A DNA stretch of 64,000 nt from Octopus sinensis (Eukaryota), in assembly GCF_006345805.1 (NCBI RefSeq), contig NC_042999.1:76446001-76510000 (forward strand). The letters run 5' to 3'. Positions 2,985 through 53,098 of the stretch are shown piece after piece (within the stretch, counting starts at the first letter, position 1; each line of letters starts with the position of its first letter). The notes beneath the pieces were generated by a model, which saw nothing but the letters and a program-made list of their open reading frames with translations, did no database searches and was not told the DNA's origin. The position numbers and the translations under genes are program-made.

Positions 2985-4020
2985 TTAGTGGAGCATTTTG
3001 ATGAAATGCGTGTATATCATATCTTTGAATTATCCATGCTAGAAAACGATACCTTCTACGAAAAAAGTTGTGAAATATAAACAACAAAAAAAGACTGTAA
3101 AATCTTTCATCCCTAATACTTCTACATGGAAAAGGCTTGACAGAAAAAGAAATAGATTATATCACGAACTTTAAATGTAAACCTAGTCATTTTTACGGCC
3201 TACATAAAATACGCAAGAACAAGATAGTTAATGAAGCCTGCAAACAGTCACCAGGCAAATGCATAAATATCCAAGCATCAGACGACTTAAAGTTAAAACC
3301 CACCACCTAAGCAATTTTCTAGACATGCTACTGAAACACTTGCTGAAATACATCAAAAGTCTCATTAGAGACGACCTAGACATGCTAGAGCACCTACCAA
3401 ATGCAACTAATGAAGAGGCATTATTGGTTTCTTTCGATGTTATTAATCTTTACACCAACATCCAACATGACTATGGAATAGAAGCAATAAATTCTGGTTG
3501 GAAAAGTACCCGGAATTACTTCCGGAACGCATAAGCCAGGTCTTTATTATTGAATCATTAAAATCTATACTTCAGAACAATTATTTCTTATTTGATGACA
3601 CCCACTATCGTCCAAAATGCGAACTTGCGATGAGAACGAAAGCAGCCCTTGTTCTTGCGAGCTTAATAATGGGTTATTTTGAATTCACCATATATGAAGT
3701 GTCATTGAAATATATGGAGAACTGGAAAAGATACCTGGATAACTGATTTATCATTTGGAAGGAGACCATTGAGAAACTTTCGGAATTCAAATCAATACAA
3801 AATAATATAAACCCTAACATTCAATTCCTCCCTTCGATATTATGATAAAAGAATTCAACAACCAAATTATAACTGACATTTATTATAAACAAACGGACTC
3901 GAAGCAATATCTTCTGCTTAGCTCAGGTCACCAGAAACACATCAAAAGAAATATACCCCTTAATTTAGCAAAAAGGATTTGCACAATAGTGTTTGATAGA
4001 AATCCTCGGGACCAACGAAG
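2985..4020 (+). mobile_element. Penelope-like element (PLE) reverse transcriptase, pseudogenised
   Basis: FYGLHKIRK (3192-3218), LVSFDVINLYTNIQH (ORF 3259), QNNYFLF..AM..KRYLD (ORF 3498) and TDIYYKQTDSKQYL..H.KHIKRNIPLNLAKRI (ORF 3842) occur in PLE RT order across three frames. Confidence 0.9.
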
Positions 4021-4502
4021 GAGAGGAGGTATGAGATGAGTATATTTATTTTACCAGTTGATATCCATATGATTACGATCATTTCACAATTATAATCATA
4101 AGATATAATTAAAAATTTATAGATATATATATATACATGAAATAGATGAAATTTTAGATTCCAGTAAGGTAAATGTCCTGGATTAACTTCATACACTTCA
4201 ATATCAAATATACAGTTAGTCGAATCAGAAGTCATAGGCCTTGTAATCTTCCAACGCCCCCATTCCACGGCCATTTCACTTAATATTTATTTACATTCAT
4301 CTATTACGTAATAATTACTTCATTTCATTTGAAATAATAAATATTATCCAATGAAAATGTCGAATAATAATTGCAAATATTGAACTGTCAAAATCTCCTC
4401 AAAATGGTAATTTCTTTCACTCTATATTTTGCGGTAAATACATTTCCTTCTTCCTCTCCCTATTGTTCTGCTTCTCTTCCTCCATTCTTTCTAGCATTCC
4501 AT

Positions 4503-5046: not shown

Positions 5047-5436
5047 GGATGGATGGATGGAAGCACTCCGTCGGTTGCGACGACGAGGGTTCCGGTTGAT
5101 CCGATCAACGGAACAGCCTGCTCGTGAAATTAACGTGTAAGTGGCTGAGCACTCCACAGACACGTGTACCCTTAACGTAGTTCTCGGGGATAATCAGCGT
5201 GACACAGAGAGTGACAAGGCTGACCCTTTGAAATACAGGTACAACAGAAACAGGAAGTAAGATTGAGAGAAAGTTGTGGTGAAAGAGTACAGCAGGGATC
5301 ACCACCATCCCCTGCCGGAGCCTCGTGGAGCTTTAGGTGTTTTCGCTCAATAAACACTCACAACGCCTGGTCTGGGAATCGAAACCGCGATCCTACGACC
5401 GCGAGTCCGCTGCCCTAACCACTGGGCCATTGCGCC
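5047..5436 (-). mobile_element. tRNA-derived SINE, family B (full length, ATCC tail)
   Basis: Minus head GGCGCAATGGCCCAGTGGTTAGGGCAGCGGACTCG with B-box-like GGTTTCGATTCC; colinear with the copy at 52735-53098. Confidence 0.9.
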
Positions 5437-5440
5437 CCCA

Positions 5441-5745
5441 ATATATATATATATATATACATATATATACACATATATATATACACACATATATATATAT
5501 ATACACATACATAAATATATATACATACATATATATACAAATATACATACATAGATTTATATATATATATATATACATAGATATATATACATACATACAT
5601 ATATATACATTTGTATATTTACATAAATATATACATACATATATATACATATATACATATATACATAATATACATACAAATATATATATATACTTATATA
5701 TATATATATATATATACATGTACATATTCATATACATATATATAT

Positions 5746-5821
<76 letters not shown>

Positions 5822-6165
5822 TTTCATTTCATTTCATTTCATTTAGTTTCAGCTCACGATCTGTGGCCATGCTGGGGTACCGCCATTGTATATATATGTA
5901 TGTATATATATGTATATATATATATATATATGTATATATATGTATGTATATATATTATATATATATATATATATATAGTATATATATATATATAATACAT
6001 ACATATACGTATATATGTATATTATGTATATATGAATGTATATATATGTGAGTATATATATATATATATATTATATATATAAATGCATATGTATACGTAC
6101 CTATATATACGTATGCATGTATATATATTTATTTATATATGTATATATACATACTTATATATATA
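5441..6165. repeat. (TA)n-rich compound microsatellite block with a short SINE tail remnant near 5841-5888
   Basis: Directly visible. Confidence 0.9.
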
Positions 6166-6184
6166 TCATGTCACGTTAACTTAC

Positions 6185-6244
6185 TTGCAGTGCCGTATCG
6201 AGAACCCAGTTGTGTCAAGATTCGTTAGTAAATCCTGTACTCAC
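6185..6244 (-). other. Candidate 60-nt exon (non-coding, poison or recursive-splicing exon)
   Basis: Minus strand: TTTCTTTTTCTTTCTATTTTTCATAG acceptor, exon beginning GTGAGT, 60 nt, then donor GTAAGT at 6184. Stop codons in all three frames. Confidence 0.5.
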
Positions 6245-6676
6245 CTATGAAAAATAGAAAGAAAAAGAAACCATATAGTGTTCGATAGAGAATTTTTGTT
6301 AAATGGAAATTAAATGGGAATTTTGTATCATATATGAATAGATACATTTGACAAAGAAATTTTATATTGCATTCAGACGTAATATAAAAATTAAAAATAC
6401 ACAATATTAGGTGTTATGAATGATCACATTTCAAAAATCATAATAAAATATTAATAAAAATAAATTATTAATTCTTGTTAAATGAATGTATCTGCTTCAA
6501 GTGATGGGAAATTCTATGAAGGAATATTTAATGACTTATGTGTTTAATATCTTTATTATGCTGCTCTTTATTCTTTATTTTGTTCTTTTTTGTTTAGTTT
6601 ACATTTACTGAAAAATCTATATCTTATTAAAATTATATTTCTGTGTTCTGTTCAATATTTTATGCACATTCATATG

Positions 6677-6677
<1 letters not shown>

Positions 6678-6715
<38 letters not shown>

Positions 6716-6830
6716 ATATATATATATATATATATATATATAGGTTGTATGTGTCGTATATATGTATGCATATATGAGTGTGTGTGTGTGTGGTGTGTGT
6801 GTGTGTGTGTGTGTGTACATGGACATACAC
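6678..6830. repeat. (TA)n/(TG)n microsatellite
   Basis: Directly visible. Confidence 0.95.
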
Positions 6831-12570: not shown

Positions 12571-13692
12571 GAGATTGGCACAATCGTTGGTGCTTCGGCA
12601 GAGATGTTTATTAGTTTCTTACCTTAGAAATACGTTAGTTGGACAAGGTCGTATAACATGCAGCGCATTTCTAAGTAATCACCAGACTCTAAAATACTCT
12701 AAAATGATGGCTGCTCTTTGATTATAAGAAATATAGAAGGACGAGACGGTGCGAGAAATGAAGCTGATAATGGAGAAGTGATGTTACAACATTTCTTCAT
12801 CTCTTCTTCCCGCGGTGCCTATCATCTTTGTTTTAACAACTTTGATATTGTCGTCATTTATATCATTTAAGTATTTCACTGAAAGTACTATAAGTTTTGA
12901 TTGCCACTCATGTCTTGGGCTCGAGAACTTCCCGTCAAATTGCACCGTTGTTATGTGCACACATGTCAATTTCTTTGATGTAAACTCTAGCTACTTTAGA
13001 GTCCATAATTTTCGGTTAGCCGCACGAGTCGAAAGCAAATCTACGATAAAAAAATATTGCAGTGATGAGAATCCCACTTTTTACTAAACATAGTCTACGA
13101 TTTTATTACACACAGTCTTACATTTTGCTTCTTCACTTAATTTGTTTGTTTGTTTTTTGGGGTTTTTTTAAGTTGGTAGGGTGTGATTTGAAATCGGTTT
13201 GTTAGCTATTTCATAATGATCAAGAGGCTAATTAGAGACTCCCACGCTGTCTCGCTGGAGGGAGAACGAATGGTCATGGAGCAGATGATACAAAAATGGA
13301 TGATAGTATTTTTAGAGATGCAAGTATTGTTGCTGCTGCTGCTACTGATGCTGCTCCTGATGCTGCTGCTGTTGATACTGTTGGTATTGACGGCCAATTG
13401 TGCTTTCGGCTGTTCTATTAATATTAGTGGTCAAAGTTTGTTGATGGTGGTGATGGTTTTGATAATGGAATGTTGTATGTATGTAAACGGTTGAATGAGG
13501 GCTAATGGAGATAGTAGTAATGGTATTGATTGAACCGGCGGGGACGTTACTGATGGAATATACTTGAGGTGATGTTACAGATGGTATTTGATATGAAATT
13601 GATACTAATGGTGAGTTGGATGATAATGTGATGGGGTTGCTTGCAACAGTCGCGCAACAGTGTTGTTTGCACCGTTTTGCGGCGGCGTGACT

Positions 13693-13743
<51 letters not shown>

Positions 13744-14035
13744 ACAACAAACAGGGTGTTTGTTTTCGATGAAATGTTGGTGTGAGCGGTGATGGTACCG
13801 ATGTTCATAATGATATTCGTGATTGTAATCGTGGGAATGATGATGGGGTGTTGTGATCTTCATGTCGGTGGCTGCAGCGATGGTGGTGGGCATCTGGTAG
13901 TAAGTGAAGAGGGTGGCGTAATGATGCTGATAAGGTTGATTGTCTTGTTTTGTTGGTGGTAATGTGTTAGATGTGTTGGTGATGGTTGTAGTAGCCGTGT
14001 TGCTTGTTATATTGATGGTGGTGGTGGTGGTGGTG

Positions 14036-16082: not shown

Positions 16083-16293
16083 TCTTTTCTACTATAGGCA
16101 CAAGGCCTGAAATTTGTGGGAAGGGGACCAGTCGAGTAGATAGACGCAGTGCACAACCGGTACTTAATTTATCAACTTCAAGAGAATGGAAGGCAAAGCC
16201 GACCTCGGCAGAATTTGAACTCTGAAAGCAAAGACGAATTAAATGCAGCTAAGCATTTTACCCGGCATGCTAGCAATTCTACCAGCTCGCCGC
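16083..16293 (-). mobile_element. tRNA-derived SINE family C
   Basis: Minus head GGCGGCGAGCTGGTAGAATTGCTAGC, B-box GAGTTCAAATTC, tail GGCCTTGTGCCTATAGTAGAAAAG. Confidence 0.85.
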
Positions 16294-16302
16294 CTTGTTC
16301 TT

Positions 16303-16363
16303 GCTGTTGTTGTTGTTGTTGTTGTTGCTGTTGTTGTTGTTGTTGTTGTTGTTGTTGTGTTGC

Positions 16364-16397
<34 letters not shown>

Positions 16398-16416
16398 GAT
16401 GATGATGATGATGATG
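16303..16416. repeat. (GTT)n/(GAT)n microsatellite
   Basis: Directly visible. Confidence 0.95.
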
Positions 16417-16987
16417 GTTTGTTACATAATAACATAGCCACAGATTTGGAAAGAGGCATCGATTAAATAAATCCCAGTACTTTTCATTTAAGTATATCGT
16501 GCATTTTCTGAAGAGTAGTATCGTTGGCTATAAGTTTACCATGGGCCAACCATTTGTTCATTGGAAGTTCGATGACGATACTGACAAAGAAGTGTCACTT
16601 AATGCCGAAAGAAAATAGCCTAAACTACTGTTGTTCTAAGGACCGATTTATCAGTTTTCTCCCCAATGCTTACGTTCTTCGTTGATGTATATTCATAAAA
16701 ACCTATACAGATTTGTAGGAAAGGTTATAGACATGTATATAGACGACAAGCTTCCCAATTTCCATCCACAAATATTTTTCTTACAAAGTATTGGCTAACT
16801 TGAGATCAGATGAAAATATATTTGTTCAAGAAGCTAAGTGTTGAGATCGGACCCAGAATCAAGTGCCTGCGAACCAAATTTCTTAATCGTGCATCTATTA
16901 TAGTTTGACCAGTACTATGTTAACGATCCAGAAGCATAAAATGCTAAGTTGATTCCGATTAAACTTGAAATGTAAACGAACTCTAAT

Positions 16988-18667: not shown

Positions 18668-18824
18668 AAAGCTAGCTTTGTGATAAGGAGCTTGCTTGCC
18701 AACCACATTTTTCCGGGTTCAGTCCCACTGTGTGGCACCTTGGGCAAGTATCTTCTATTACAGACTCGGGCCGATAAGAGCCTTCTGAGTGGATTTGGTA
18801 GATAGAAATTAAAGCAAGCCCATC

Positions 18825-18882
<58 letters not shown>

Positions 18883-19090
18883 GTTTGTGTGCCTATGTTT
18901 GTCCCCCAACATCCCTTGACAACCGAGGCTGGTGTGTTTACGTCCCCGTAACTTAGCTGTTCCACAAAAGAGACCGTAGAATAAGTACTAGGCTTACAAA
19001 GAATAAGTCCTGTGGTCGATTTACTCGACTAAAGGCGGTGTTCCAGCATGGCCGTAGTCAAATGACCGAAACAAATAAAAGAATAAAAGA
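18668..19090 (+). mobile_element. tRNA-derived SINE family A (CORE-like) with internal (TA)n
   Basis: GGGTTCAGTCCCACTG.GTGGCACCTTGGGCAAG head and core; tail GGCGGTGTTCCAGCATGGCC...TAAAAGAATAAAAG. Confidence 0.9.
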
Positions 19091-19320
19091 ATATATATAT
19101 ATACATATATATACACACATATATATGCATATATACATATACATATATATACACACACATACATATATATAGATATATATACACATACATAAATACATAT
19201 ATATATACACATACATATATACATATATATATATACACATATATACATATATATATATATACACATATACATATATACATGCATATATATATATGTACAT
19301 ATGCATATACATATATATAT

Positions 19321-21546: not shown

Positions 21547-21615
21547 ACACACATGTATGTACACATTGACACACACACACACACATATATATAAACATAC
21601 ACATATATACATATA

Positions 21616-22023
21616 GGCGCAGAAATGGGTGTGTGGTAAGTAGCTTACTTACAAACCACATGGTTCAGGGTTCAGGCCTACTGCGTGGCACTTTGGGCAA
21701 GTGTCTTCTACTATAGCCTCGGGCCTCCCAAAGCCTGGTCAGTGGATTTGGTAGACGGAAACTGAAAAAAGCAATATATATATATGCAAGTGTGTGTGTG
21801 TGTATGTATGACTGTGTGTCTATGTTCGTCTCCACCAATATTACTTGACAACAGATGCTGGTGTGTTTACGTCCCCGTAACTTAGCAGTCCGGCAAAAGA
21901 GAACGAGAGAATAAGCACTAGGCTTACAAAGAATAAGCTCTGGAGTCGATTTGCTCGACTAAAGGCGGTGCTCCAGCATGGCTGCAAACAAATGTCTGAA
22001 ATAATCAGAAAAAGAAAAAGAAA
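21616..22023 (+). mobile_element. SINE family A, full length
   Basis: GGCGCAG...GTGTGGTAAGTAGCTT...GGGTTCAGG...CTTTGGGCAAGTGTCTT...GGCGGTGCTCCAGCATGGC. Confidence 0.9.
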
Positions 22024-22063
<40 letters not shown>

Positions 22064-22087
22064 ATATAGACACGCACACATATATTT

Positions 22088-22130
<43 letters not shown>

Positions 22131-22140
22131 TACTCTTGAA

Positions 22141-22320: not shown

Positions 22321-22387
22321 AATATGTGTAAATATGTATATATAGATTTTATATATTCTTATATGTATATATATGTATATTTTTACT

Positions 22388-22438
<51 letters not shown>

Positions 22439-22528
22439 CATACAAACAAACAACCTATACATACATACTCATGCACACACACAAATACACACAGACACAA
22501 ACATAAACACAGTCACAAACAAACACAC

Positions 22529-22559
<31 letters not shown>

Positions 22560-22564
<5 letters not shown>

Positions 22565-23051
22565 GATCGAGCTATGGTGCTTAGTAAAAGACAGCCTAAA
22601 AACTTGAAAACATTACTAACAAAGGCAAAATTTGACCTCAGCAACAAAGACCAAACATTCACGGTATCTAAATGCAATGATAGCCGATGTGGCACATGCC
22701 AATTCATACATACCGGTCAATATATAAACACAAAAACCGGGAAAATATTCACAAACGCGAATATGAACTGCAAAAGCAGAAATTTAATTTACTGCATCAA
22801 ATGCCCAAATTGTGAAGAAATATATGTAGGTCAGACGGGAAACGCACTATTAGAACGCTCACGTGTACACCGGCAACAGATTAGAGACCCAGAGGTCCGT
22901 CAGATACCTTTGAGTAACCACCTAGCAACATGTGGTCGGAAAATATATAATATTTCCATTCTACAAATTACACAGCCCAAGTGAAATCGAGAGGAAAATC
23001 AGAGAAAAGAATTTTATTGATAAATTCGAACCCAAGCTAAATAAGCAATAA
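22560..23051 (+). mobile_element. Penelope-like element C-terminus with GIY-YIG endonuclease (one frameshift)
   Basis: RQPKNLKTLL..CNDSRCGTC..NCKSRNLIYCIKCPNCEEIYVGQT..RVHRQQI..HL. A one-base shift near 22951-22956 restores IFPFYKL..EIERKIREKNFIDKFEPKLNKQ* (stop 23049-23051). Confidence 0.9.
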
Positions 23052-29994: not shown

Positions 29995-31200
29995 CACAGT
30001 AACCAGAATTTATTCAGAAAGCATACATACTTGACATATTAGCTCTCTCGAGCATAGTCCTATTAAGAATTTCACCCTGCCACTTGATGTCAAGAATTTT
30101 TCGCAGGCATGTCAAGGGAAAACCATTAAATGTTTCTCGATGTCTTTGATAAACCGCCCAGTAGCATAGTCATGACGGCAGCTTTCTATCTCTCATCTGT
30201 TGTTTTTATGGTCAAACCAAGTTTTTTCTAAACATTTTCTAAGACGGTGAAAGGCAGAGCTAGCTTTTGATAAGTTTGCGTTCACATCATCATCAATGTG
30301 AACACATTGACAGTGTACTTCCAAGGTAGGTAAATCTCTTTACAGTTTCGGGAGGTTGATTGTTCACTATCAGGAATGTTAAACGTAATGTTTTCTGGGA
30401 GCGGGCTGATACAGAACTTCAATCTTTTTGACACTGATTGAGACCGCAGTTATCGCAAGCTGAATCAAAGCTGTCTAATCTCTGTCGAAGATCTACTTCA
30501 AGGTTCGCATTTAGGGCACACTCATCTGCAAAAAGAGCTCCTTTGTTGAAGTGATCATGATTTTAGTCTTTACTTTCAGGTGGGTGGTCTTAAAAAGAGA
30601 CCAGCGTCATATTTGTTCTGAGTTGGATATCAGATGTTAATGGGTGAATGGTATCGAGAAGCACTCCACTAAACATCAAACCGAAAAGCGAGGGTTACGG
30701 CAAAAGGTGCCCAGAATTCTCCATTATTGAAAACACGATATTATATGCCATCGTGAATCTGATACGCCAAGCAAATAAATTTTTGTGGGCAACCAAATTC
30801 CTATATTACTTTCTAGATACCATCTCTGCTTAAAGTATCAAAAGCTTTATTCAAGCCGATAGATATAGAGTAGAGGCTGTTGCACTATGGAATGTTTCCT
30901 TCTTTTGTTTTTATAGGGATGTACAATGCCGACATTTTTGCATTCTTGAGCATTTACTTCGTGCTCCTACACTGTAGTAAATAGGACAGGTATTTTCTGT
31001 CCGTCATGTTTGTAGATCTCGACAATTGCACTGGACCTAGAGTCGTTGCCGTTGGTTAGTACCTTGATAGCCAATTAAGTTTTGCCAAGTGTAGGTGGAT
31101 CACTTGCCTGCTAGTTAGCAGACACCTGAGACAGCCGGTTTATTGCTTCTACATTTATATGAGGGATGTAGTTAAGACAAAGTCAAGGTGTTCTGACCAT
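29995..31200 (-). mobile_element. Decayed RTE-clade (BovB-like) LINE reverse transcriptase
   Basis: Minus translation gives, in order, AIKVLTNG.., KAFDTLSRDG..EFGCP, PSLFGLMFSGVLLD, FADECAL, RFTYLGSTLS..IDDDVNANLSKASSAFHRL. Confidence 0.85.
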
Positions 31201-32718: not shown

Positions 32719-34294
32719 CTAAACATATACATATCTTTAGATAGATACAGAATATGAAGACAGAGTATCGTTATTCTATAGAAATTGTTTATTAGAAGAT
32801 AAGGCGATAGGGGGGGGGTAAGAGTTATAGATAACTGGTAAATATATGGTGCACGCTACAACTAGTATTTATCTGCGTTAATTAGAAGACGAAGACAAAC
32901 ATTTTGATTATCGTAACAAAAATTGATCCAATAATTAAAATAGATTATAGCTACCTTTTTGACAAGATTAATTCTATGGCAATATTTTCATTGCTATTTT
33001 GCTCTTGCCGTCAAAAATGATGGCTATTTCCGTTATATTCTTTAGATGGATTTTCATTATAGTCATAACATTTAGAATTTTTAACTGATTTAATTTTAAG
33101 TTACTTCTAGTCTGTTCAATCATGTTTATAGACTATATAGCAATTTTTCAAAAGTTTCTCTACGTTTCAACCGTTTAATTTATGCTCATAAACCATAACT
33201 ACCTTTTCCCTGCATCACCTTCATCACCTCGGCCACTTCTTAATGCTGGTTTCGAGGATCCTAGCAGAAAAGAGTTGGCATTTTCTTTTATATAGGATGT
33301 TGGTCTATATTAGATCATGTCTCCTACGTGATGAACTGAAGTTGGTAAGGCAAAATAATGTTTCGTGTTTTAGTTTTGTGATTCTAGTTTCTGGATGGGC
33401 TGATCAAACCTATTACACTTCTGGAAAATAATTATCCTCAGAATAGTCACTGCGTTAATCAACGAGTAGCTTCTATGTGGTTGCTTGGTTCGCTAGAGGC
33501 AGCAGCCACACCATCCTCAAATTACACCCTACTATCTTAAAAGTGAAAGGAGGATTCAATACAAAAGTATTAGACAGATACAACGTGTTTAATAAAATGT
33601 AGGGATGGTTATATCAGGAAGTGGAATAACATTAATTATATGTCAACTCGGTTAATACCTGGCCTAGGGTTAAATAATAAAATATCAACTGTAATCTACT
33701 CTCTAAAACACTTGGCCATGTGCCTAAGCAATATTCACCATTACAGCAATAGATGACCTGTTGATTAAATAAAAAAAGAACACCTAGTACATTCTTAACA
33801 ATAATTGCTTTCGTTCTTTTACGCTCCGAGTTCAAATCCTGTTGATTTTTATCATTCATCACACCATTATATTGTAAAAGGAATATATAAGATACTGACC
33901 AAGATATAAGATTCTTTAATTGTATGCATTCTTCAACTTGGCATCTTGTTTCACAAACATGAGCCAGAAGATAACATACATTTCACTTTACACTCTAGCC
34001 ATAAAACTTCTGATATTTCTTTCGCTATAGAGAATTAATCGATCGATTCAGCAGAGATTAGTTGCCGGGAAGTATTCCATAAATATCAGTTGCTCTTCGA
34101 TTGATTCTCTCTGTTATCTTAAGGTAAGCATAATGATGGATCATCGTTTTAAGGAGAGTGAACAGGAATTCCACCACACTCTACTGGTGTCGACAGAAGA
34201 TATATTACTATCAATAAGTTATTTACTGAAGTCTATCTTTATTCTCATGATAACACACTACATACCTATACACGCACACATGTACATACACAAT

Positions 34295-46989: not shown

Positions 46990-48740
46990 CATGCGTTGTT
47001 GTCAGTGTGCGCATACGTTGTTGTCAGCGTTGTGCGTATCACCGAAAAAAGTGGCCAAGCTGTGTACAGCTGGTGAAAAAAGAAGCTCAACTGTAAGGTA
47101 AGACTTTTGTTTTTTGGGTCCAGTGGGGGTTTGTTGTTTGCGGTAATTATTTTTGTACAAGCTAGAGGTCCTCACTGGATTCTAGACTCTGGTCTACCTG
47201 CGGTTGAGCAAAAGTGGTTCACGTTAAGTGAATATTTTTTTCTCACTTTATTGCGTGAATTGTTGCTTGGGGACTTATTGCGCCTCCTAAAAATTTGTTC
47301 ACTTTTTATGAATTTTTGAAATAATTGAAAGAATTGCTGTTTTGGGGGAGTTTCTTTGCCTCCGAAGATTGAACGACTTGTATACCAGTTTTTGTGGCTG
47401 TTATGTTCCAGTTGTGGCGTTCCAGGTTCTACCTTGGCCGGGAGTACCTAGTGGCTGGCAAATTCTTTTGCTGTGTTTTTGAACTATTAACTTTCTGTCT
47501 TCTAAACTTTTTTCACTTTCATTTTTCGTGAACTGTTTTATTTTTCTTCCTTCTATTTTATTGTGACTTTATTTTGATTTCTTTCTTTTCTTCTTTCTTT
47601 TAAAGTTTTATTTTGAACTATTTTCGAACTGCTATTACAAAAAAAAACATGGCAATGAACAAAGACAATGTTTTGGAGTGGGAAATTAGACCATTCAAAC
47701 AGTGATTGAAAAACCTTGAAGTGAGGATGTGTGGTGTCGCTCGACACCATCGCCCTATTTCAAAAGACTGTAATTGAAATGCAGTTGGCAGTCCCTGTGG
47801 ACCCAATCAGCCAATCTGGTTTTTCCAGATTTTTTTAAATGGCCGGGTGTAGGTACCCGGTGATTCTTGAGGGTCGCCCCCACCCCTAGGTGTCATCGGT
47901 ACCTGGAGCCTGGCCATATAAAAAAACTTCCCCTGGAACAAAGTAAGATCCTGGAGGAGTTGGTTGAGACCTCTGTAGAAGAGGGAACGAAGGCGGAGGG
48001 CTCATCAAAGAAGGGCCCAAGAGGAAATAGGTGAGCAACAATGGGTGGTCACCGATGGATGCTAGGGGCGAAGGAGGGGAGGCGAATCTCCCGGTCACGG
48101 AGGAGACGCAGCCTCCCTCAGGTGAGAAGAAAAAAAAGGAAGAGGAATAGAAATGGGACATTGCCGACAGTACCGAAATGACCCGGAACCTCGTCGGTGG
48201 TGGTTGTGCCACTGGCAGGGGAAGATATACTGTCAGTGAGAATTGTGCCGACGACAGTAGAAGTGACTACCTCGTCCCCGGAGGAAGACGAATTATTGTT
48301 CTTCTTCTACAGAGGCGGAGAGGTGGAGGTGTTGGAAAAGCACCATAAGGGAGTACCTTTAGCCTGCACACGGAATCCCGAATGGCCTCCGCAGATAGCT
48401 GTGAAGGTCATAACGTTGCCCGTTTTGCGTAGGCTGCAGGTACTCAACGAGGAATATCACTTGTGGCCGGGCGACGACGACACGGCACCCGCCTTGTGCT
48501 TGAATGAGACGTGGGAGATGGTGGAGGATGGGGTCACAAGCAATGTTGGGGAGGAATATGGACAAGAGTTTGAAAAGCCTCAGTGTTATTGAAAGTTCCT
48601 AGTTTCGAAAAAGAGCGGTAAGAGGCTTAGTGTCTCATTTTGCTATTGAATTGTGAACAATGTAAGAGGTTTGTTGCCTCATGGATAATATAAGAGGTCA
48701 ATGTTCTCGGGAAGAACGATCGGCGGGCGTCTCCTTTTCC
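46990..48740 (+). mobile_element. Decayed L1/Tx1-like LINE 5' half (5' UTR, ORF1, start of ORF2)
   Basis: ATG at 47649; ILEGRP..CHRYLEPGHIKKLP zinc-knuckle relic (47891-47932); GC-richer ORF1 tail (ORF 48197-48592); NVRGL APE-start motif at 48659-48673. Confidence 0.5.
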
Positions 48741-48847
48741 CCCATTAATCATCATTTTCACTTTTCATTTCGTATAACATTACGTATGTGTCCAGCCTGC
48801 AGCTTCCTATCTCTATGTAAGGCCTTTATGGCCAATATAATGAAATA

Positions 48848-49204
48848 AAGAAGCTTGCTTCCTAACCACATGGTTTCGAGGTCAGTCCCAATGCGTGGTA
48901 CCTTGGGCAAACGATTTCTACTATAGTCTGAGGCCGACGAAAGCCTTGTAAGTGGATGTGGAAACCGAAAGAAGATTGTCGTATATGTGTTTCTGCCTGT
49001 TTGTGTGTCTGTGTTTGTTACCCCATCAACGCTTGACAACCGGTGCCCGTACATTGGTAGTTCAGCAATGAAGTATGAAAGAATAAGTACTAGACTTAAG
49101 AAACAAGTCCTGGGGTCGATTTGCTCGACTAAAATTGTTCAAGGCGGTGCTCCAGCATGGCTGCAGTCAAATGACCGAAGCAAGTAAAAGAATAAAAGAA
49201 AAGA
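48848..49204 (+). mobile_element. SINE family A (about 20 nt missing at 5' end)
   Basis: AAGAAGCTTGCTT...GTACCTTGGGCAA...GGCGGTGCTCCAGCATGGC...GTAAAAGAATAAAAG. Confidence 0.88.
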
Positions 49205-50323
49205 ACTATAAAAACAGCAAATAGATACATCTTTTTGTGTCGTTTGTGGAGTTAATATTAAATTGCCCGAACTACAATAGCGAAAGGAAGCCCAACTAGG
49301 TATAAAACATGGCAGGACAATTTCCTCATTTCTCTCGTCTGCAACGGGAACAGCTAGAAGTCTTTGCATTCGTTTACTTACTACAGCGTAGGCGTTGACA
49401 CATTGAATTTCTGATGAATTATATAATATATTCTGCTTTTGCACATTTTAAATACAGCTGAAACAAATGACACATTTACTACAAATGAATTACAAATATT
49501 ACAAATAAAATATCCCGTCATGCGACACGATATATAGATAGATACACATAAACACACACACATACATATACATACATACATGCATACATACATACACACA
49601 TGTTATGCGTATATGCGTTTATACACACTAGTACATGTATTCCGGCAAAAGTGATAGCAGTTTAAAGAAAAGAAAATCAACTATTCTTTAATAAATTCAT
49701 CGACATAACATATATTCCATATATTTGATATAGACTTGTATAGTAAGAATAATTAAACTTTTATTGAAAATATTTTGAAAGATTGGATCCAAAGAGAATT
49801 AAATATTATAGGAAGTTTCATGCAAATTGTTTTAATATATTATTGAGGCTAAAACAATAAATCTTCTTTATTAAATTGTTAAAGATTTCTCCAACTATTA
49901 TTTTAATAATCACTGGTGAGCCAATGCCACCAAAACTGTCAGTGATTCAAATGTTCAAATATACATTAAAAATTATACTCAGTCATGATTTATGCCAAGA
50001 AACGTGGAAAAAGTCAGCATGAGTTTATAGTTCACAGATTTAATTACTTTAGTTCTTACTGAATGATAATGCGCACGAGATTTCTTAACGATTTTCTTCC
50101 CTAAAAAGATGAAAATTGTAACAAACACCGTTGTTTCAAGTACTAAACTAATGATCAGAATTATGTAAACGATACATACAGAATGAATAATTTGGGCGGG
50201 ACAAAAATAGATACGCACGAACATCCACACCCACACACTACATACATACACACACACACACACACAAACGCACACACACACACACACACACACACAAATA
50301 TATATATATATATATATATATAT

Positions 50324-50620
50324 CACCGTGACCGACCAGGCTATCAGATGTTGCTAAACATCGCTGGTCACAATGCGCTTTGTATTGTTTTAGCATTCAA
50401 GCGACGCCATCCCGCTGGCTAGGCAAGCAGGCCAACAGAAGAAAGAGTGAGAGAAAGTTGTGGCGAAAGAGTAGAGCAGGGATCGTCACCAGCCCCTGCT
50501 GGAGCCTCGTGGAGCTTTAAGTGTTTTCGCTCAATAAACACTCACAACGCCCGGTCTGGGAATCGAAACCGCGATCCTACAACCGCGAGTCCGCTGCCCT
50601 AACCACTGGGCCATTGCACC
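50324..50620 (-). mobile_element. SINE with family B head and a different 3' half
   Basis: 50440-50620 matches the B head and body; 50324-50440 does not match the B tail seen at 5047 or 52735. Confidence 0.8.
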
Positions 50621-50989
50621 TCCTATATATATATATATATAGTTTTGTGGTTGGTGGATATATTGAATTAAATTTTAAGTTTTTCTGGTATGAGATACCC
50701 CTCGTTACTTTCAGTGTTTCATTATGTGTGCATTGGTGTGGTCGTTTGTGAATAAATGCGTCTGTGCCAGAATTTGTGTGCGAATGTTAGTGCGAATGTG
50801 TATTTCTCTGCCTGAGTATTTCATTGAGAATAGGATCTTCTCAAGATATGAAATATCAGTCAAACTTCAACAGGAGTTCGATGTTTTGCAGGGTAGATCC
50901 CGAATACACAAGAATTGAGTGAAGCTAATGTCAAATTTCATTCTGTAGTCATAATCACATAAGATGAAATGTGTGTCTATACACAAACA

Positions 50990-51789: not shown

Positions 51790-51991
51790 TCTTTTACTCT
51801 TTTACTTGTTTCAGTCATTTGACTGCGGCCATGCTGGAGCACCGCCTTTAATCGAGCAACTCGACCCCGGGATTTATTCTTTGTAAGCCCAGTACTTATT
51901 CTATCGGTTTCTTTTGCCGAACCGCTAAGTGACGAGGACATAAACACACCAGCATCGATTGTCAAGTAATGCTAGGGGGACAAACACAAAC

Positions 51992-52031
<40 letters not shown>

Positions 52032-52193
52032 GACGGGCTTCTTTCAGTTACCGTCTACCAAATCCATTCACAAGGCTTTGGTCGGCCCGAGGCTATAGTA
52101 GAAGACACTTGCCCAAGGTGCCACGCAGTGGGACTGAACCCGGTACCATGTGGTTGGTAAACAAGCTACTTACCACACAGCCACTCCTGCGCC
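51790..52193 (-). mobile_element. SINE family A, full length, least decayed copy
   Basis: Minus AGGCGCAGGAGTGGCTGTGTGGTAAGTAGCTTG...GGGTTCAGTCCCACTGCGTGGCACCTTGGGCAAGTG...TAAAAGAGTAAAAG. Confidence 0.93.
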
Positions 52194-52297
52194 TGTGTAA
52201 TTTTTCGCACAATTCCACCCAGTCGTTTGACCGTGAATCCCAAGACAAGAAAGAATCTCCAATGATACATTTACATACATATATATATATATATATA

Positions 52298-52672: not shown

Positions 52673-52675
<3 letters not shown>
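52298..52675. mobile_element. Tc1/mariner-type MITE
   Basis: 26-bp TIRs CACTTGCGTCAGAAATTAATTAGCAC and GTGCTAATTAATTTCTGACGGTAGTG (3 mismatches), TA on both flanks, 378 bp. Confidence 0.85.
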
Positions 52676-52706
<31 letters not shown>

Positions 52707-52734
52707 TTGTTCACACATATGTATAGAGAGTAGA

Positions 52735-53098
52735 GGCGCAATTGCCCAGTGGTTAGGGCAGCAGACTCGCGATCGTAGGATCACGGTTTCGATCCGCAGA
52801 CCGGGCGTTGTGAGTGTTTATTGAGCGAAAACACCTAAAGCTCCACAAGGCTCCGGTAGGGGGTGGGTGAACCCTGCTGTACTCTTTCGCCACAAGTTTC
52901 ACTCTTTCTTCCTGTTTCTGCTGTACATGTACTTCAAAGGACCAGCGTTGTCACACTCTGTGTTACGCTGAATCTCCCCGAGACCTACGTTAAGGGTATA
53001 CTTGTCTGTGGAGTGCTCAGATACGTGCACGTTAATTTCACGAGCAGGCTGTTCCGTTGATTGGATCAACGCTCGTCGTAGTAACCGACGGAGTGTCA
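52735..53098 (+). mobile_element. SINE family B, full length
   Basis: Colinear with the reverse complement of 5057-5436. Confidence 0.9.

What the first reader, a model, noticed from the sequence alone, without database searches (positions are those of the whole stretch)
6179..6270. Candidate recursive splice site (AG|GTGAGT) with a stop-filled 60-nt RS-exon
Seen on minus: a 24-nt pyrimidine tract plus AG (6245-6246), immediately a consensus donor GTGAGT (6244-6239), and 60 nt later a second consensus donor GTAAGT (6184). The exon has stops in all frames (TGA, TAA, TGA) and is a unique island between microsatellites. Known: Drosophila ratchet points and human RS-exons in very long introns have this acceptor/donor junction, a downstream exon-defining donor, and frequent premature stops. 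Inference: the window may lie inside a giant minus-strand intron that is removed stepwise. I am not aware of this being characterised in cephalopods.
Basis: partly seen in the sequence, partly recalled or inferred. Interest (0 to 1): 0.7.

Follow-up and report, generated by a model that had tools for sequence, protein, structure and literature searches.

The report
Candidate recursive splice site, unverified
On the minus strand a strong intron-end signal is fused to a perfect intron-start signal, with a second intron-start signal 60 bases later; this matches the known sites where very long introns are removed in steps and is rarer than chance predicts, but no RNA, annotation or cross-species data could be reached to show it is used.

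Summary
On the minus strand there is a 22/24 pyrimidine tract (6270-6247), AG (6246-6245), GTGAGT (6244-6239), a 60-nt segment with stops in all three frames, and GTAAGT (6184-6179). The segment sits in a 512-bp unique island between (TA)n arrays.

The arrangement is rare. It is the only strong-tract AG|GTRAGT site in the window, and 0 of 100 shuffles reproduce it. I estimate about 2-8 x 10^-4 chance occurrences of the full composite per window. That is roughly 2-30 per genome if the genome is 2-3 Gb.

- GC contrast of the segment against its flanks is in the top 0.6% of the window.
- A 229-nt AG-free zone lies upstream of the acceptor.
- The regenerated donor is predicted to pair with U1 better than the downstream donor.

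None of the defining functional features could be tested: sense orientation in a long intron, junction or lariat reads, and conservation. No coding exon, host gene or strand signal was found, and the source organism could not be identified.

Verdict: a credible candidate (about 0.4) for a ratchet point with a cryptic recursive-splicing (RS) exon. Chance (about 0.35) and an ordinary non-coding exon (about 0.18) are live rivals. If real, it is a new member of a known kind.

The parts
6247..6474 (-). AG-free zone upstream of the acceptor. The previous AG is at 6475-6474, giving 229 nt from AG to AG, in AT-rich DNA that is not microsatellite.
   Evidence: 4.9 AG expected from composition, 0 observed. 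Only 0.2% of mononucleotide shuffles have no AG. It is one of the few long AG-free runs in the window that is not low-complexity.
6298..6302 (-). Nearest match to the branch-point consensus yUnAy (TTAAC, branch A at 6299), 54 nt upstream of the acceptor G. This is an inferred candidate only.
   Evidence: Read. No yUnAy match lies in the usual -18 to -40 interval, and no AG lies between this site and 6246.
6247..6270 (-). Pyrimidine tract, 22 of 24 pyrimidines (tttctttttctttctatttttcat).
   Evidence: It scores 18/20 in the window used for scoring. Only 12 of 6527 AG dinucleotides in the window (both strands) have a tract this good.
6245..6246 (-). Acceptor AG, in the context tAG|G.
6239..6244 (-). 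Consensus donor GTGAGT directly abutting the acceptor. This is the putative ratchet point or recursive 5' splice site.
   Evidence: Predicted U1 5'-end duplex is -12.1 to -13.6 kcal/mol if the upstream exon ends in AG.
6235..6237 (-). Second acceptor-like CAG, 10 nt downstream of the first AG. It is a possible competitor that would remove the GTGAGT and give a 50-nt exon with one open frame.
6185..6244 (-). Putative 60-nt RS-exon. GC is 0.44-0.45 against about 0.2 in the flanks, and there are stops in all three frames.
   Evidence: (GC contrast in the top 0.6% of all positions).
6224..6230 (-). TACTAAC inside the putative exon. It is a perfect yeast-type branch consensus and is probably coincidental.
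   Evidence: By composition I estimate under 1% chance in 60 nt, but it was noticed post hoc.
6179..6184 (-). Second consensus donor GTAAGT (context CAA|GTAAGTTA), the putative exon-defining donor.
   Evidence: Predicted U1 duplex is -5.6 kcal/mol.
5441..6166 (.). Imperfect (AT)n microsatellite bounding the island. On the minus strand it starts 13 nt after the second donor.
6679..6742 (.). (TA)32 microsatellite bounding the island on the other side, followed by (GT)20 at 6778-6816.

Best explanation
The element is most likely a splice-competent cryptic exon on the minus strand whose acceptor is fused to a donor. In other words, it is a recursive splice site (ratchet point) with a 60-nt RS-exon inside a long intron.

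Proposed mechanism (every RNA step is inferred; only the sequence is shown):
1. The segment is recognised by exon definition. U2AF and U2 bind the 24-nt pyrimidine tract and AG at 6246-6245, using a branch point somewhere in the long AG-free zone. U1 binds GTAAGT at 6184.
2. The upstream exon is spliced to position 6244, removing the 5' part of the intron.
3. The junction regenerates a donor, ...AG|GTGAGTAC. It pairs with U1 better than CAA|GTAAGTTA does, so it is used for the next step.
4. The 60 nt are then removed together with the downstream intron and leave no trace in the mRNA.
5. If the downstream donor wins instead, a stop-filled 60-nt poison exon is included and the transcript should be degraded.
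For: Anatomy:
- The anatomy is exact: a 22/24 pyrimidine tract, AG|GTGAGT, and GTAAGT 60 nt later.
- It matches published descriptions. The consensus is (Y)nNCAG|GTAAGT.
- Most fly RS sites have a further 5' splice site less than 100 nt downstream.
- Cryptic RS-exons are short (about 50 nt), generally out of frame, and skipped when the ratchet-point donor is the stronger one.

Rarity:
- 0 of 100 shuffles give the tract plus AGGTRAGT.
- 5 of 100 shuffles give the double-donor spacing, even without the tract.
- The composite expectation is about 2 x 10^-4 per window from the window's own frequencies, and lower in the Markov simulation.
- It is the top site in the window on both tract and donor score, and the only strong acceptor with a GTRAGT 25-300 nt downstream.

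- The exon interior has GC 0.44 against flanks of about 0.2, a contrast in the top 0.6% of positions.
- There is a 229-nt AG-free zone upstream (P about 0.002).
- Local RNA is less structured than shuffles, z = +2.0, so the sites should be accessible.
- U1 pairing is -12 to -13.6 kcal/mol for the regenerated donor against -5.6 for the downstream donor.

Context:
- No coding exon was detected anywhere in the 64 kb. This fits a very long intron, though intergenic DNA fits equally well.
[quoted passage not shown] The background was about 0.1 per 100 kb.
Against: - There is no evidence of transcription, host gene or strand. SINE-like repeats are 3+/3-. AATAAA is 73+/99-, mostly from one cluster. 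Donor-like and acceptor-like motifs are balanced between strands.
- Conservation could not be tested.
- A few to a few dozen such composites are expected by chance in a 2-3 Gb genome. Strict pseudo-exons are common: about 5 acceptor/donor pairs are expected per window by chance.
- The fly hallmark TT at -6/-5 (99.5% of ratchet points) is T-C here.
- No branch-point consensus lies at the usual -18 to -40. The nearest yUnAy is at -54.
- A CAG 10 nt downstream could compete as acceptor and would delete the recursive donor.
- The comparison of donor strengths depends on the unknown last bases of the upstream exon.
- In repeat-rich vertebrate genomes, which this window resembles, ratchet-point motifs are not enriched and fully cryptic RS sites are few.
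Confidence: 0.4

Rival explanations
1. Chance juxtaposition. The element is a pseudo-exon with a fortuitous AG|GTGAGT in non-functional intergenic or intronic DNA, never used by the spliceosome or used only as splicing noise.
For: - Strong acceptor-like sites (39) and GTRAGT hexamers (59) are frequent in the window. About 5 strict acceptor/donor pairs are expected per window.
- Genome-wide, about 2-30 full composites are expected by chance for 2-3 Gb (the genome size is assumed).
- The first-stage reader could have flagged many kinds of pattern, so there is a look-elsewhere effect.
- A weaker AG|GTAAGC site exists on the other strand at 34122.
- There is no strand, gene or transcription evidence.
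- Stops in all frames are what 27% of random 60-mers show.
Against: - The per-window probability is only about 2-8 x 10^-4.
- Chance does not predict the GC contrast (top 0.6%).
- Chance does not predict the 229-nt AG-free zone (P about 0.002).
- Chance does not predict the favourable order of donor strengths.
Confidence: 0.35
2. An ordinary expressed exon that happens to begin with a donor-like sequence. It could be a 60-nt non-coding, UTR, poison or lncRNA exon. Alternatively it is a 50-nt exon using the CAG at 6237-6235, or an upstream exon with two alternative donors at 6244 and 6184. Re-splicing would not be its main role.
For: - Both splice sites are consensus-grade and the body is GC-richer than the flanks, as in real exons of AT-rich introns.
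- 1.7-4.9% of annotated human exons regenerate a usable donor at their start, and most are simply included.
- The 50-nt reading from the internal CAG is open in one frame.
Against: - The 60-nt version has stops in all three frames.
- Neither 60 nor 50 nt behaves like a coding cassette: the 60-nt version has no open frame and 50 is not a multiple of three.
- No neighbouring exon or coding signal was found within 64 kb.
- A full GTGAGT at an exon start is uncommon. With a typical upstream exon end it is predicted to out-compete the exon's own donor, which favours skipping.
Confidence: 0.18
3. Part of an interspersed repeat or transposon-derived sequence whose consensus happens to carry these motifs. 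The arrangement would then recur many times in the genome without a splicing function.
For: The window is packed with repeats: a SINE-like family, Penelope-like pieces and microsatellites. The genome itself could not be searched.
Against: - The island 6167-6680 has no second copy in the 64 kb, whereas the real repeat families do.
- There are no terminal repeats other than microsatellite self-complementarity.
- There is no match to an RNA family.
- The 26-mer across the junction is absent from the viral and JGI metagenome collections.
Confidence: 0.05

Closest known systems
Drosophila intronic ratchet points with cryptic RS-exons (Hatton 1998; Burnette 2005; Duff 2015; Joseph 2018; Joseph & Lai 2021)
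   Same: - A fused (Y)n-N-Y-AG|GTRAGT with a prominent pyrimidine tract.
- A second donor less than 100 nt downstream that defines a short (about 50 nt), out-of-frame, stop-containing cryptic exon.
- A ratchet-point donor predicted to be stronger than the exon donor.
- At least 57 kb of exon-free sequence on the upstream side.
Sources.
   Different: - The hallmark TT at -6/-5 is T-C here.
- +3 of the donor is G rather than the fly-preferred A.
- No conservation, saw-tooth coverage, junction or lariat evidence is available.
- The host intron and strand are unknown.
- The organism is a repeat-rich large genome, presumed cephalopod, not a compact insect genome.
Vertebrate RS-exons in long neuronal genes (Sibley 2015) and EJC-repressed annotated RS-exons (Blazquez 2018)
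   Same: - An exon-definition mechanism.
- Competition between the regenerated donor and the RS-exon donor.
- A stop-containing RS-exon that acts as a poison exon when included.
- A repeat-rich, long-intron genomic setting.
Source: plus my own knowledge of Sibley 2015.
   Different: - Only about 10 fully cryptic intronic sites were defined in human. Most vertebrate RS-exons are annotated and included.
- The vertebrate sites were found from RNA data and are conserved, and neither is available here.
Zero-length exon / pseudo-exon of rat alpha-tropomyosin (Grellscheid & Smith 2006, as summarised in PMC2773006)
   Same: An intronic pseudo-exon whose acceptor is immediately followed by a donor. It can behave either as an NMD-inducing alternative exon or as a zero-length exon.
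   Different: In tropomyosin the arrangement is not thought to serve removal of a long intron. The context and regulation here are unknown.
Ordinary intronic pseudo-exons / decoy exons
   Same: A pair of good splice-site matches at exon-like spacing in non-coding DNA, which occurs often by chance.
   Different: Pseudo-exons do not require, and rarely have, a consensus donor abutting the acceptor. I estimate that feature at about 6 x 10^-4 per AG in this window (4 of 6526 other AGs).

Membership tests
Recursive splice site (ratchet point) with cryptic RS-exon | Juxtaposed acceptor and donor: (Y)n N Y AG | GTRAGT | tested here: met
   tttttcatAG|GTGAGT at 6254-6239 (-). This is the only match in the window, with none in 100 shuffles.
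Recursive splice site (ratchet point) with cryptic RS-exon | Pyrimidine tract more prominent than at ordinary acceptors | tested here: met
   22/24 pyrimidines, or 18/20 in the scoring window. Only 12 of 6527 AGs in the window reach this.
Recursive splice site (ratchet point) with cryptic RS-exon | TT at positions -6/-5 (99.5% of Drosophila ratchet points) | tested here: not met
   The candidate has T at -6 and C at -5 (criterion). This feature is documented only for Drosophila, and its relevance outside flies is unknown.
Recursive splice site (ratchet point) with cryptic RS-exon | Additional donor less than 100 nt downstream, defining a short RS-exon (about 50 nt) | tested here: met
   GTAAGT at 6184-6179, giving a 60-nt exon (criterion).
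Recursive splice site (ratchet point) with cryptic RS-exon | Regenerated donor stronger than the RS-exon donor, so that the cryptic exon is skipped | tested here: inconclusive
   The U1 duplex is -12.1 to -13.6 kcal/mol if the upstream exon ends in AG, against -5.6 for CAA|GTAAGTTA. It drops to -6.9 if the exon ends poorly. The upstream exon is unknown. This is a simple thermodynamic proxy, not MaxEnt or NNSPLICE.
Recursive splice site (ratchet point) with cryptic RS-exon | RS-exon body out of frame or carrying premature stops | tested here: met
   Stops in all three frames. This does not discriminate: 27% of random 60-mers here do the same.
Recursive splice site (ratchet point) with cryptic RS-exon | Lies in sense orientation inside a long (more than about 10 kb) intron | not testable with these tools
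   - No annotation or source genome was reachable.
- No coding exon was found in 64 kb, which fits an intron or intergenic DNA equally.
- Strand proxies are uninformative.
Recursive splice site (ratchet point) with cryptic RS-exon | Splicing intermediates: junction reads from the upstream donor to the site, saw-tooth nascent RNA coverage, lariats from the regenerated donor | not testable with these tools
   No RNA-seq data are accessible. Exact look-ups of window ORFs in the assembly collection found nothing.
Recursive splice site (ratchet point) with cryptic RS-exon | AG|GT core (and downstream donor) conserved above the flanks across species | not testable with these tools
   - No related genome is in the collections.
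- The junction 26-mer is absent from viral and JGI metagenome contigs.
- Transposon homologues of only 44-80% identity suggest the source genome is not represented in depth.
Ordinary coding cassette exon | An open reading frame through the exon, with length usually a multiple of three | tested here: not met
   The 60-nt version has stops in all frames. The 50-nt version from the internal CAG is open in one frame but is not a multiple of three.
Interspersed repeat / transposon fragment | Multiple diverged copies | tested here: inconclusive
   No second copy exists in the 64-kb window, unlike the real repeat families. The whole genome could not be searched.

The most novel reading that the evidence does not exclude
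This is a working ratchet point with a cryptic RS-exon in a cephalopod, more broadly a lophotrochozoan, gene with an intron of more than 60 kb. It would be the first recursive splice site described outside insects and vertebrates. It would suggest that stepwise removal of long introns through exon-defined RS-exons is an ancestral bilaterian mechanism, one that large-genome molluscs use in their long (probably neural) genes.
Probability: 0.35. Interest if true: 0.55.

Novelty: new member of a known kind. Interest (0 to 1): 0.35.

Why it matters
Recursive splicing has been shown experimentally only in Drosophila and vertebrates. Motif enrichment hints at it in other insects and in sea urchin. 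The searched literature contains nothing on octopus and only incidental mentions for molluscs.

Cephalopods combine very large, repeat-rich genomes with long neural genes. They are therefore a natural place to ask two questions. Is stepwise intron removal a general bilaterian solution, or a lineage-specific one? Does the fly pattern (many cryptic sites) or the vertebrate pattern (few cryptic sites, many included RS-exons) apply?

A single sequence-only candidate does not answer either question. It does give an exact, cheaply testable coordinate and a motif definition for a genome-wide sense/antisense test.

Tried and rejected
1. Known RNA families. Rfam at gathering thresholds found nothing. 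At permissive thresholds it gave only microsatellite artefacts (mir-297/466-like), none overlapping 6179-6270. There are no tRNAs.

2. Host gene or exons. Pfam on 10 plus 129 non-repetitive ORFs of at least 50 aa from all six frames gave only a weak GIY-YIG hit (transposon) and one spurious hit. The best-looking non-repeat ORF (48182-48589) has no homologue among 5.8 billion proteins.

3. Locating the window or its organism.
- Exact look-up of 10 window ORFs found none in the collection.
- Homologues of the Penelope-like ORF are unnamed ENA, Logan and NCBI contigs at 44-80% identity, and their records do not name an organism.
- I ran no further search on the 59-aa ORF over the site. The lack of close transposon copies indicates the source genome is not represented. 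Short-read contigs would also break at the flanking microsatellites.

4. Exact 26-mer across the junction. It is absent from the viral and JGI metagenome contigs.

5. Strand of transcription from proxies. SINE orientation (3/3), AATAAA (73/99, driven by one cluster), donor counts (26/33) and acceptor counts (20/19) are uninformative.

6. Transposon boundaries. The only inverted repeats are (TA)n self-complementarity.

7. Mini-intron reading (GTGAGT ... TACTAAC ... AAG, 61 nt). Rejected: there is no pyrimidine tract, and the would-be flanking exons are a T-tract and a microsatellite.

8. Plus-strand reading. Nothing exon-like is there: the tract is poor and there is no good donor.

9. RNA structure. 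The region is less structured than shuffles, so it is not a structured RNA element.

10. The first Markov simulation timed out and was rerun in faster form.

Full report
OBSERVATION

Reading the minus strand confirms every element at the stated coordinates:
- The tract tttctttttctttctatttttcat lies at 6270-6247. It is 22 of 24 pyrimidines, with A at 6255 and 6248.
- AG is at 6246-6245.
- GTGAGT is at 6244-6239.
- A 60-nt segment runs from 6244 to 6185.
- GTAAGT is at 6184-6179.

The segment has stops in all three frames. The alternative 50-nt reading from the CAG at 6237-6235 is open and gives DLLTNLDTTGFSIRHC. Tandem Repeats Finder places an imperfect (AT)n at 5441-6166 and a (TA)32 at 6679-6742. 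The 512-bp island between them has no other copy in the window.

IS IT MORE THAN CHANCE?

AGGTRAGT occurs five times in the window. The four plus-strand cases follow microsatellites or purine-rich DNA, with 5-11 pyrimidines in 20. The single minus-strand case is the candidate, with 18 in 20.

The tool's own dinucleotide shuffles gave:
- no match to YYYYYYNYAGGTRAGT in 100 trials, against one observed;
- at least one match to AGGTRAGT-N40-70-GTRAGT in 5 of 100 trials, against one observed.

The window's own frequencies give a similar picture:
- Eleven other AGs out of 6526 have a tract of at least 18/20.
- Four of 6526 other AGs are followed by GTRAGT.
- There are 59 GTRAGT hexamers in 128 kb of strand.
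- The expected number of tract + AG|GTRAGT sites is therefore about 0.007 per window.
- Adding a second GTRAGT 30-100 nt downstream brings this to about 2 x 10^-4, or about 8 x 10^-4 with the looser 17/20 tract.

An order-5 Markov simulation of 200 Mb gave 10 tract(at least 18)+AGGTRAGT sites per Gb of strand, and 85 per Gb at 17/20. That is lower than the empirical product.

For a 2-3 Gb genome this means roughly 2-30 chance composites genome-wide. The genome size is my assumption for an octopus and is not verified. So the arrangement is unexpected in any one window, but a handful of accidental copies must exist.

Two cautions apply:
- Acceptor/donor pairs without the AG|GT fusion are common. 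About 5 are expected per window, and the candidate is the only one observed.
- The stop-filled property adds nothing against chance, because 27% of random 60-mers here have it.

- GC contrast. The exon interior (54 nt, excluding the first GTGAGT hexamer) has GC 0.44. The flanks are about 0.2. This contrast is reached at only 0.6% of positions in the window.
- AG-free zone. Upstream of the acceptor there is no AG for 229 nt (6475 to 6246) in DNA that is not microsatellite. 4.9 AGs are expected, and only 0.2% of shuffles are AG-free. This permits a distant branch point. The nearest yUnAy match is TTAAC with its A at 6299 (-54), and none lies at the usual -18 to -40.
- RNA structure. The local RNA is less structured than shuffles (z = +2.0).
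- Donor strengths. Pairing to the U1 5' end is predicted at -12.1 to -13.6 kcal/mol for the regenerated donor if the upstream exon ends in AG. It is -5.6 for CAA|GTAAGTTA. That is the order that leads to skipping of cryptic RS-exons in flies and vertebrates.

All of these were looked for post hoc, so I give them only moderate weight.

CONTEXT

I found no gene.
- Ten long ORFs and then 129 compositionally normal stop-to-stop ORFs from all six frames gave no Pfam family. The exceptions were a weak GIY-YIG hit at 22373-22984 and one spurious hit.
- The best non-repeat ORF (48182-48589) has no homologue.
- The GIY-YIG ORF has Penelope-like relatives at 44-80% identity in unnamed ENA, Logan and NCBI contigs.
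- Ten window ORFs are not in the collection by exact look-up.

Strand proxies are uninformative:
- SINE-like copies are 3+/3-.
- AATAAA is 73+/99-, with one cluster responsible for most of the difference.
- GTRAGT is 26+/33-.
- Strong acceptors are 20+/19-.

The window is thus 64 kb of repeat-rich DNA with no detectable exon. That fits a giant intron and fits intergenic DNA equally well. If the reading is right, at least 57.7 kb of the intron lies upstream of the site.

COMPARISON WITH WHAT IS KNOWN

- The ratchet-point consensus is (Y)nNCAG|GTAAGT.
- Fly ratchet points have an unusually prominent pyrimidine tract, and TT at -6/-5 in 99.5% of cases. They sit in introns of 11-133 kb and are conserved.
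- They are recognised as short (about 50 nt), poorly conserved, out-of-frame cryptic exons. The ratchet donor normally beats the exon donor.
- Most have another 5' splice site within 100 nt.
- Recursive sites occur in most fly introns over 40 kb.

The candidate meets the motif, tract, second-donor, length and stop criteria. It meets the donor-strength order conditionally. It fails the fly-specific TT rule (T-C). The functional criteria were untestable: sense orientation in a long intron, splicing intermediates and conservation.

Base rates matter.
- Shepard et al. found about 0.07-0.12 ratchet-like sites per 100 kb on control strands in all animals.
- Humans have about 10 fully cryptic intronic sites against 197 in flies. 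Meanwhile 1.7-4.9% of annotated human exons regenerate a donor and are mostly just included.

Whether a mollusc with a vertebrate-sized, repeat-rich genome follows the invertebrate or the vertebrate pattern is unknown. This is the main source of uncertainty in my estimate.

WEIGHING

- If the genome is 'invertebrate-like', genuine sites with these strict features should outnumber the 2-30 chance composites many-fold.
- If it is 'vertebrate-like', genuine cryptic sites, ordinary non-coding exons that start with GTRAGT, and chance composites are of similar number.

The independent exon-like features raise the functional readings. The untested repeat possibility and the look-elsewhere effect lower them.

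My estimates are:
- 0.40 for a ratchet point with a cryptic RS-exon;
- 0.35 for chance;
- 0.18 for an ordinary non-coding or poison exon, or the 50-nt variant;
- 0.05 for repeat-derived sequence.

NOVELTY

No paper in the searched library links recursive splicing with octopus. The single hit for 'cephalopod' is a pair of unrelated entries in a reference list, and the two hits for molluscs each mention both terms only once. If real, this would be a new member of a known kind in a new phylum. That is useful and testable, but not a new mechanism. As it stands it is a well-formed candidate that rests on sequence alone.

Noticed in passing
window 6224-6230 (-): A perfect TACTAAC (yeast-type branch-point consensus) sits inside the 60-nt segment. 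Read with GTGAGT at 6244 and AAG at 6186-6184 it mimics a 61-nt mini-intron. There is no pyrimidine tract and the flanks make no sense as exons, so it is probably coincidence.
   Followed up: partly
window 6247-6474 (-): A 229-nt AG-free run in AT-rich DNA that is not microsatellite (4.9 AG expected, P about 0.002). Most other long AG-free runs in the window are microsatellite or low-complexity arrays.
   Followed up: yes
window 22373-22984 (+) and 3235-4036 (+): Penelope-like retroelement pieces. One is an intact 139-aa zinc-finger-like plus GIY-YIG ORF (Pfam E 2.3e-4; homologues down to 9e-49 at 44-80% identity in unnamed ENA, Logan and NCBI contigs). The others are RT-like ORFs recognised by eye only, with no Pfam hit.
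   Followed up: partly
window 30017-30169 (-): A short ORF resembling the conserved C-terminal region of LINE reverse transcriptases (…CLRKILDIKWQ…). It was recognised by eye and not tested.
   Followed up: no
window 5064-5506, 18675-19214, 21615-22133, 48848-49202, 50434-50641, 51790-52194, 52673-53095: A SINE-like repeat family, 67-93% identical between copies, with the core GGCCATGCTGGrGyACCGCC. There are three core matches on each strand, so there is no orientation bias that could reveal a transcription unit.
   Followed up: partly
window 34122-34130 (+): A weaker fused site on the opposite strand: 16/20 pyrimidines, then AAG|GTAAGC, with no good second donor within about 100 nt. It is a useful reminder that relaxed versions of the motif arise on either strand.
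   Followed up: yes
window 13216-13893 and 16149-16466: Triplet and low-complexity arrays that translate as long poly-L, poly-Y, poly-Q, poly-C and poly-T runs on both strands. They give long spurious ORFs.
   Followed up: no
window 47800-49500: A GC-richer stretch (about 0.40) with several 60-136-aa ORFs on both strands. There was no Pfam hit among the ORFs scanned and no homologue for the longest ORF (48182-48589). Its nature is unexplained.
   Followed up: partly
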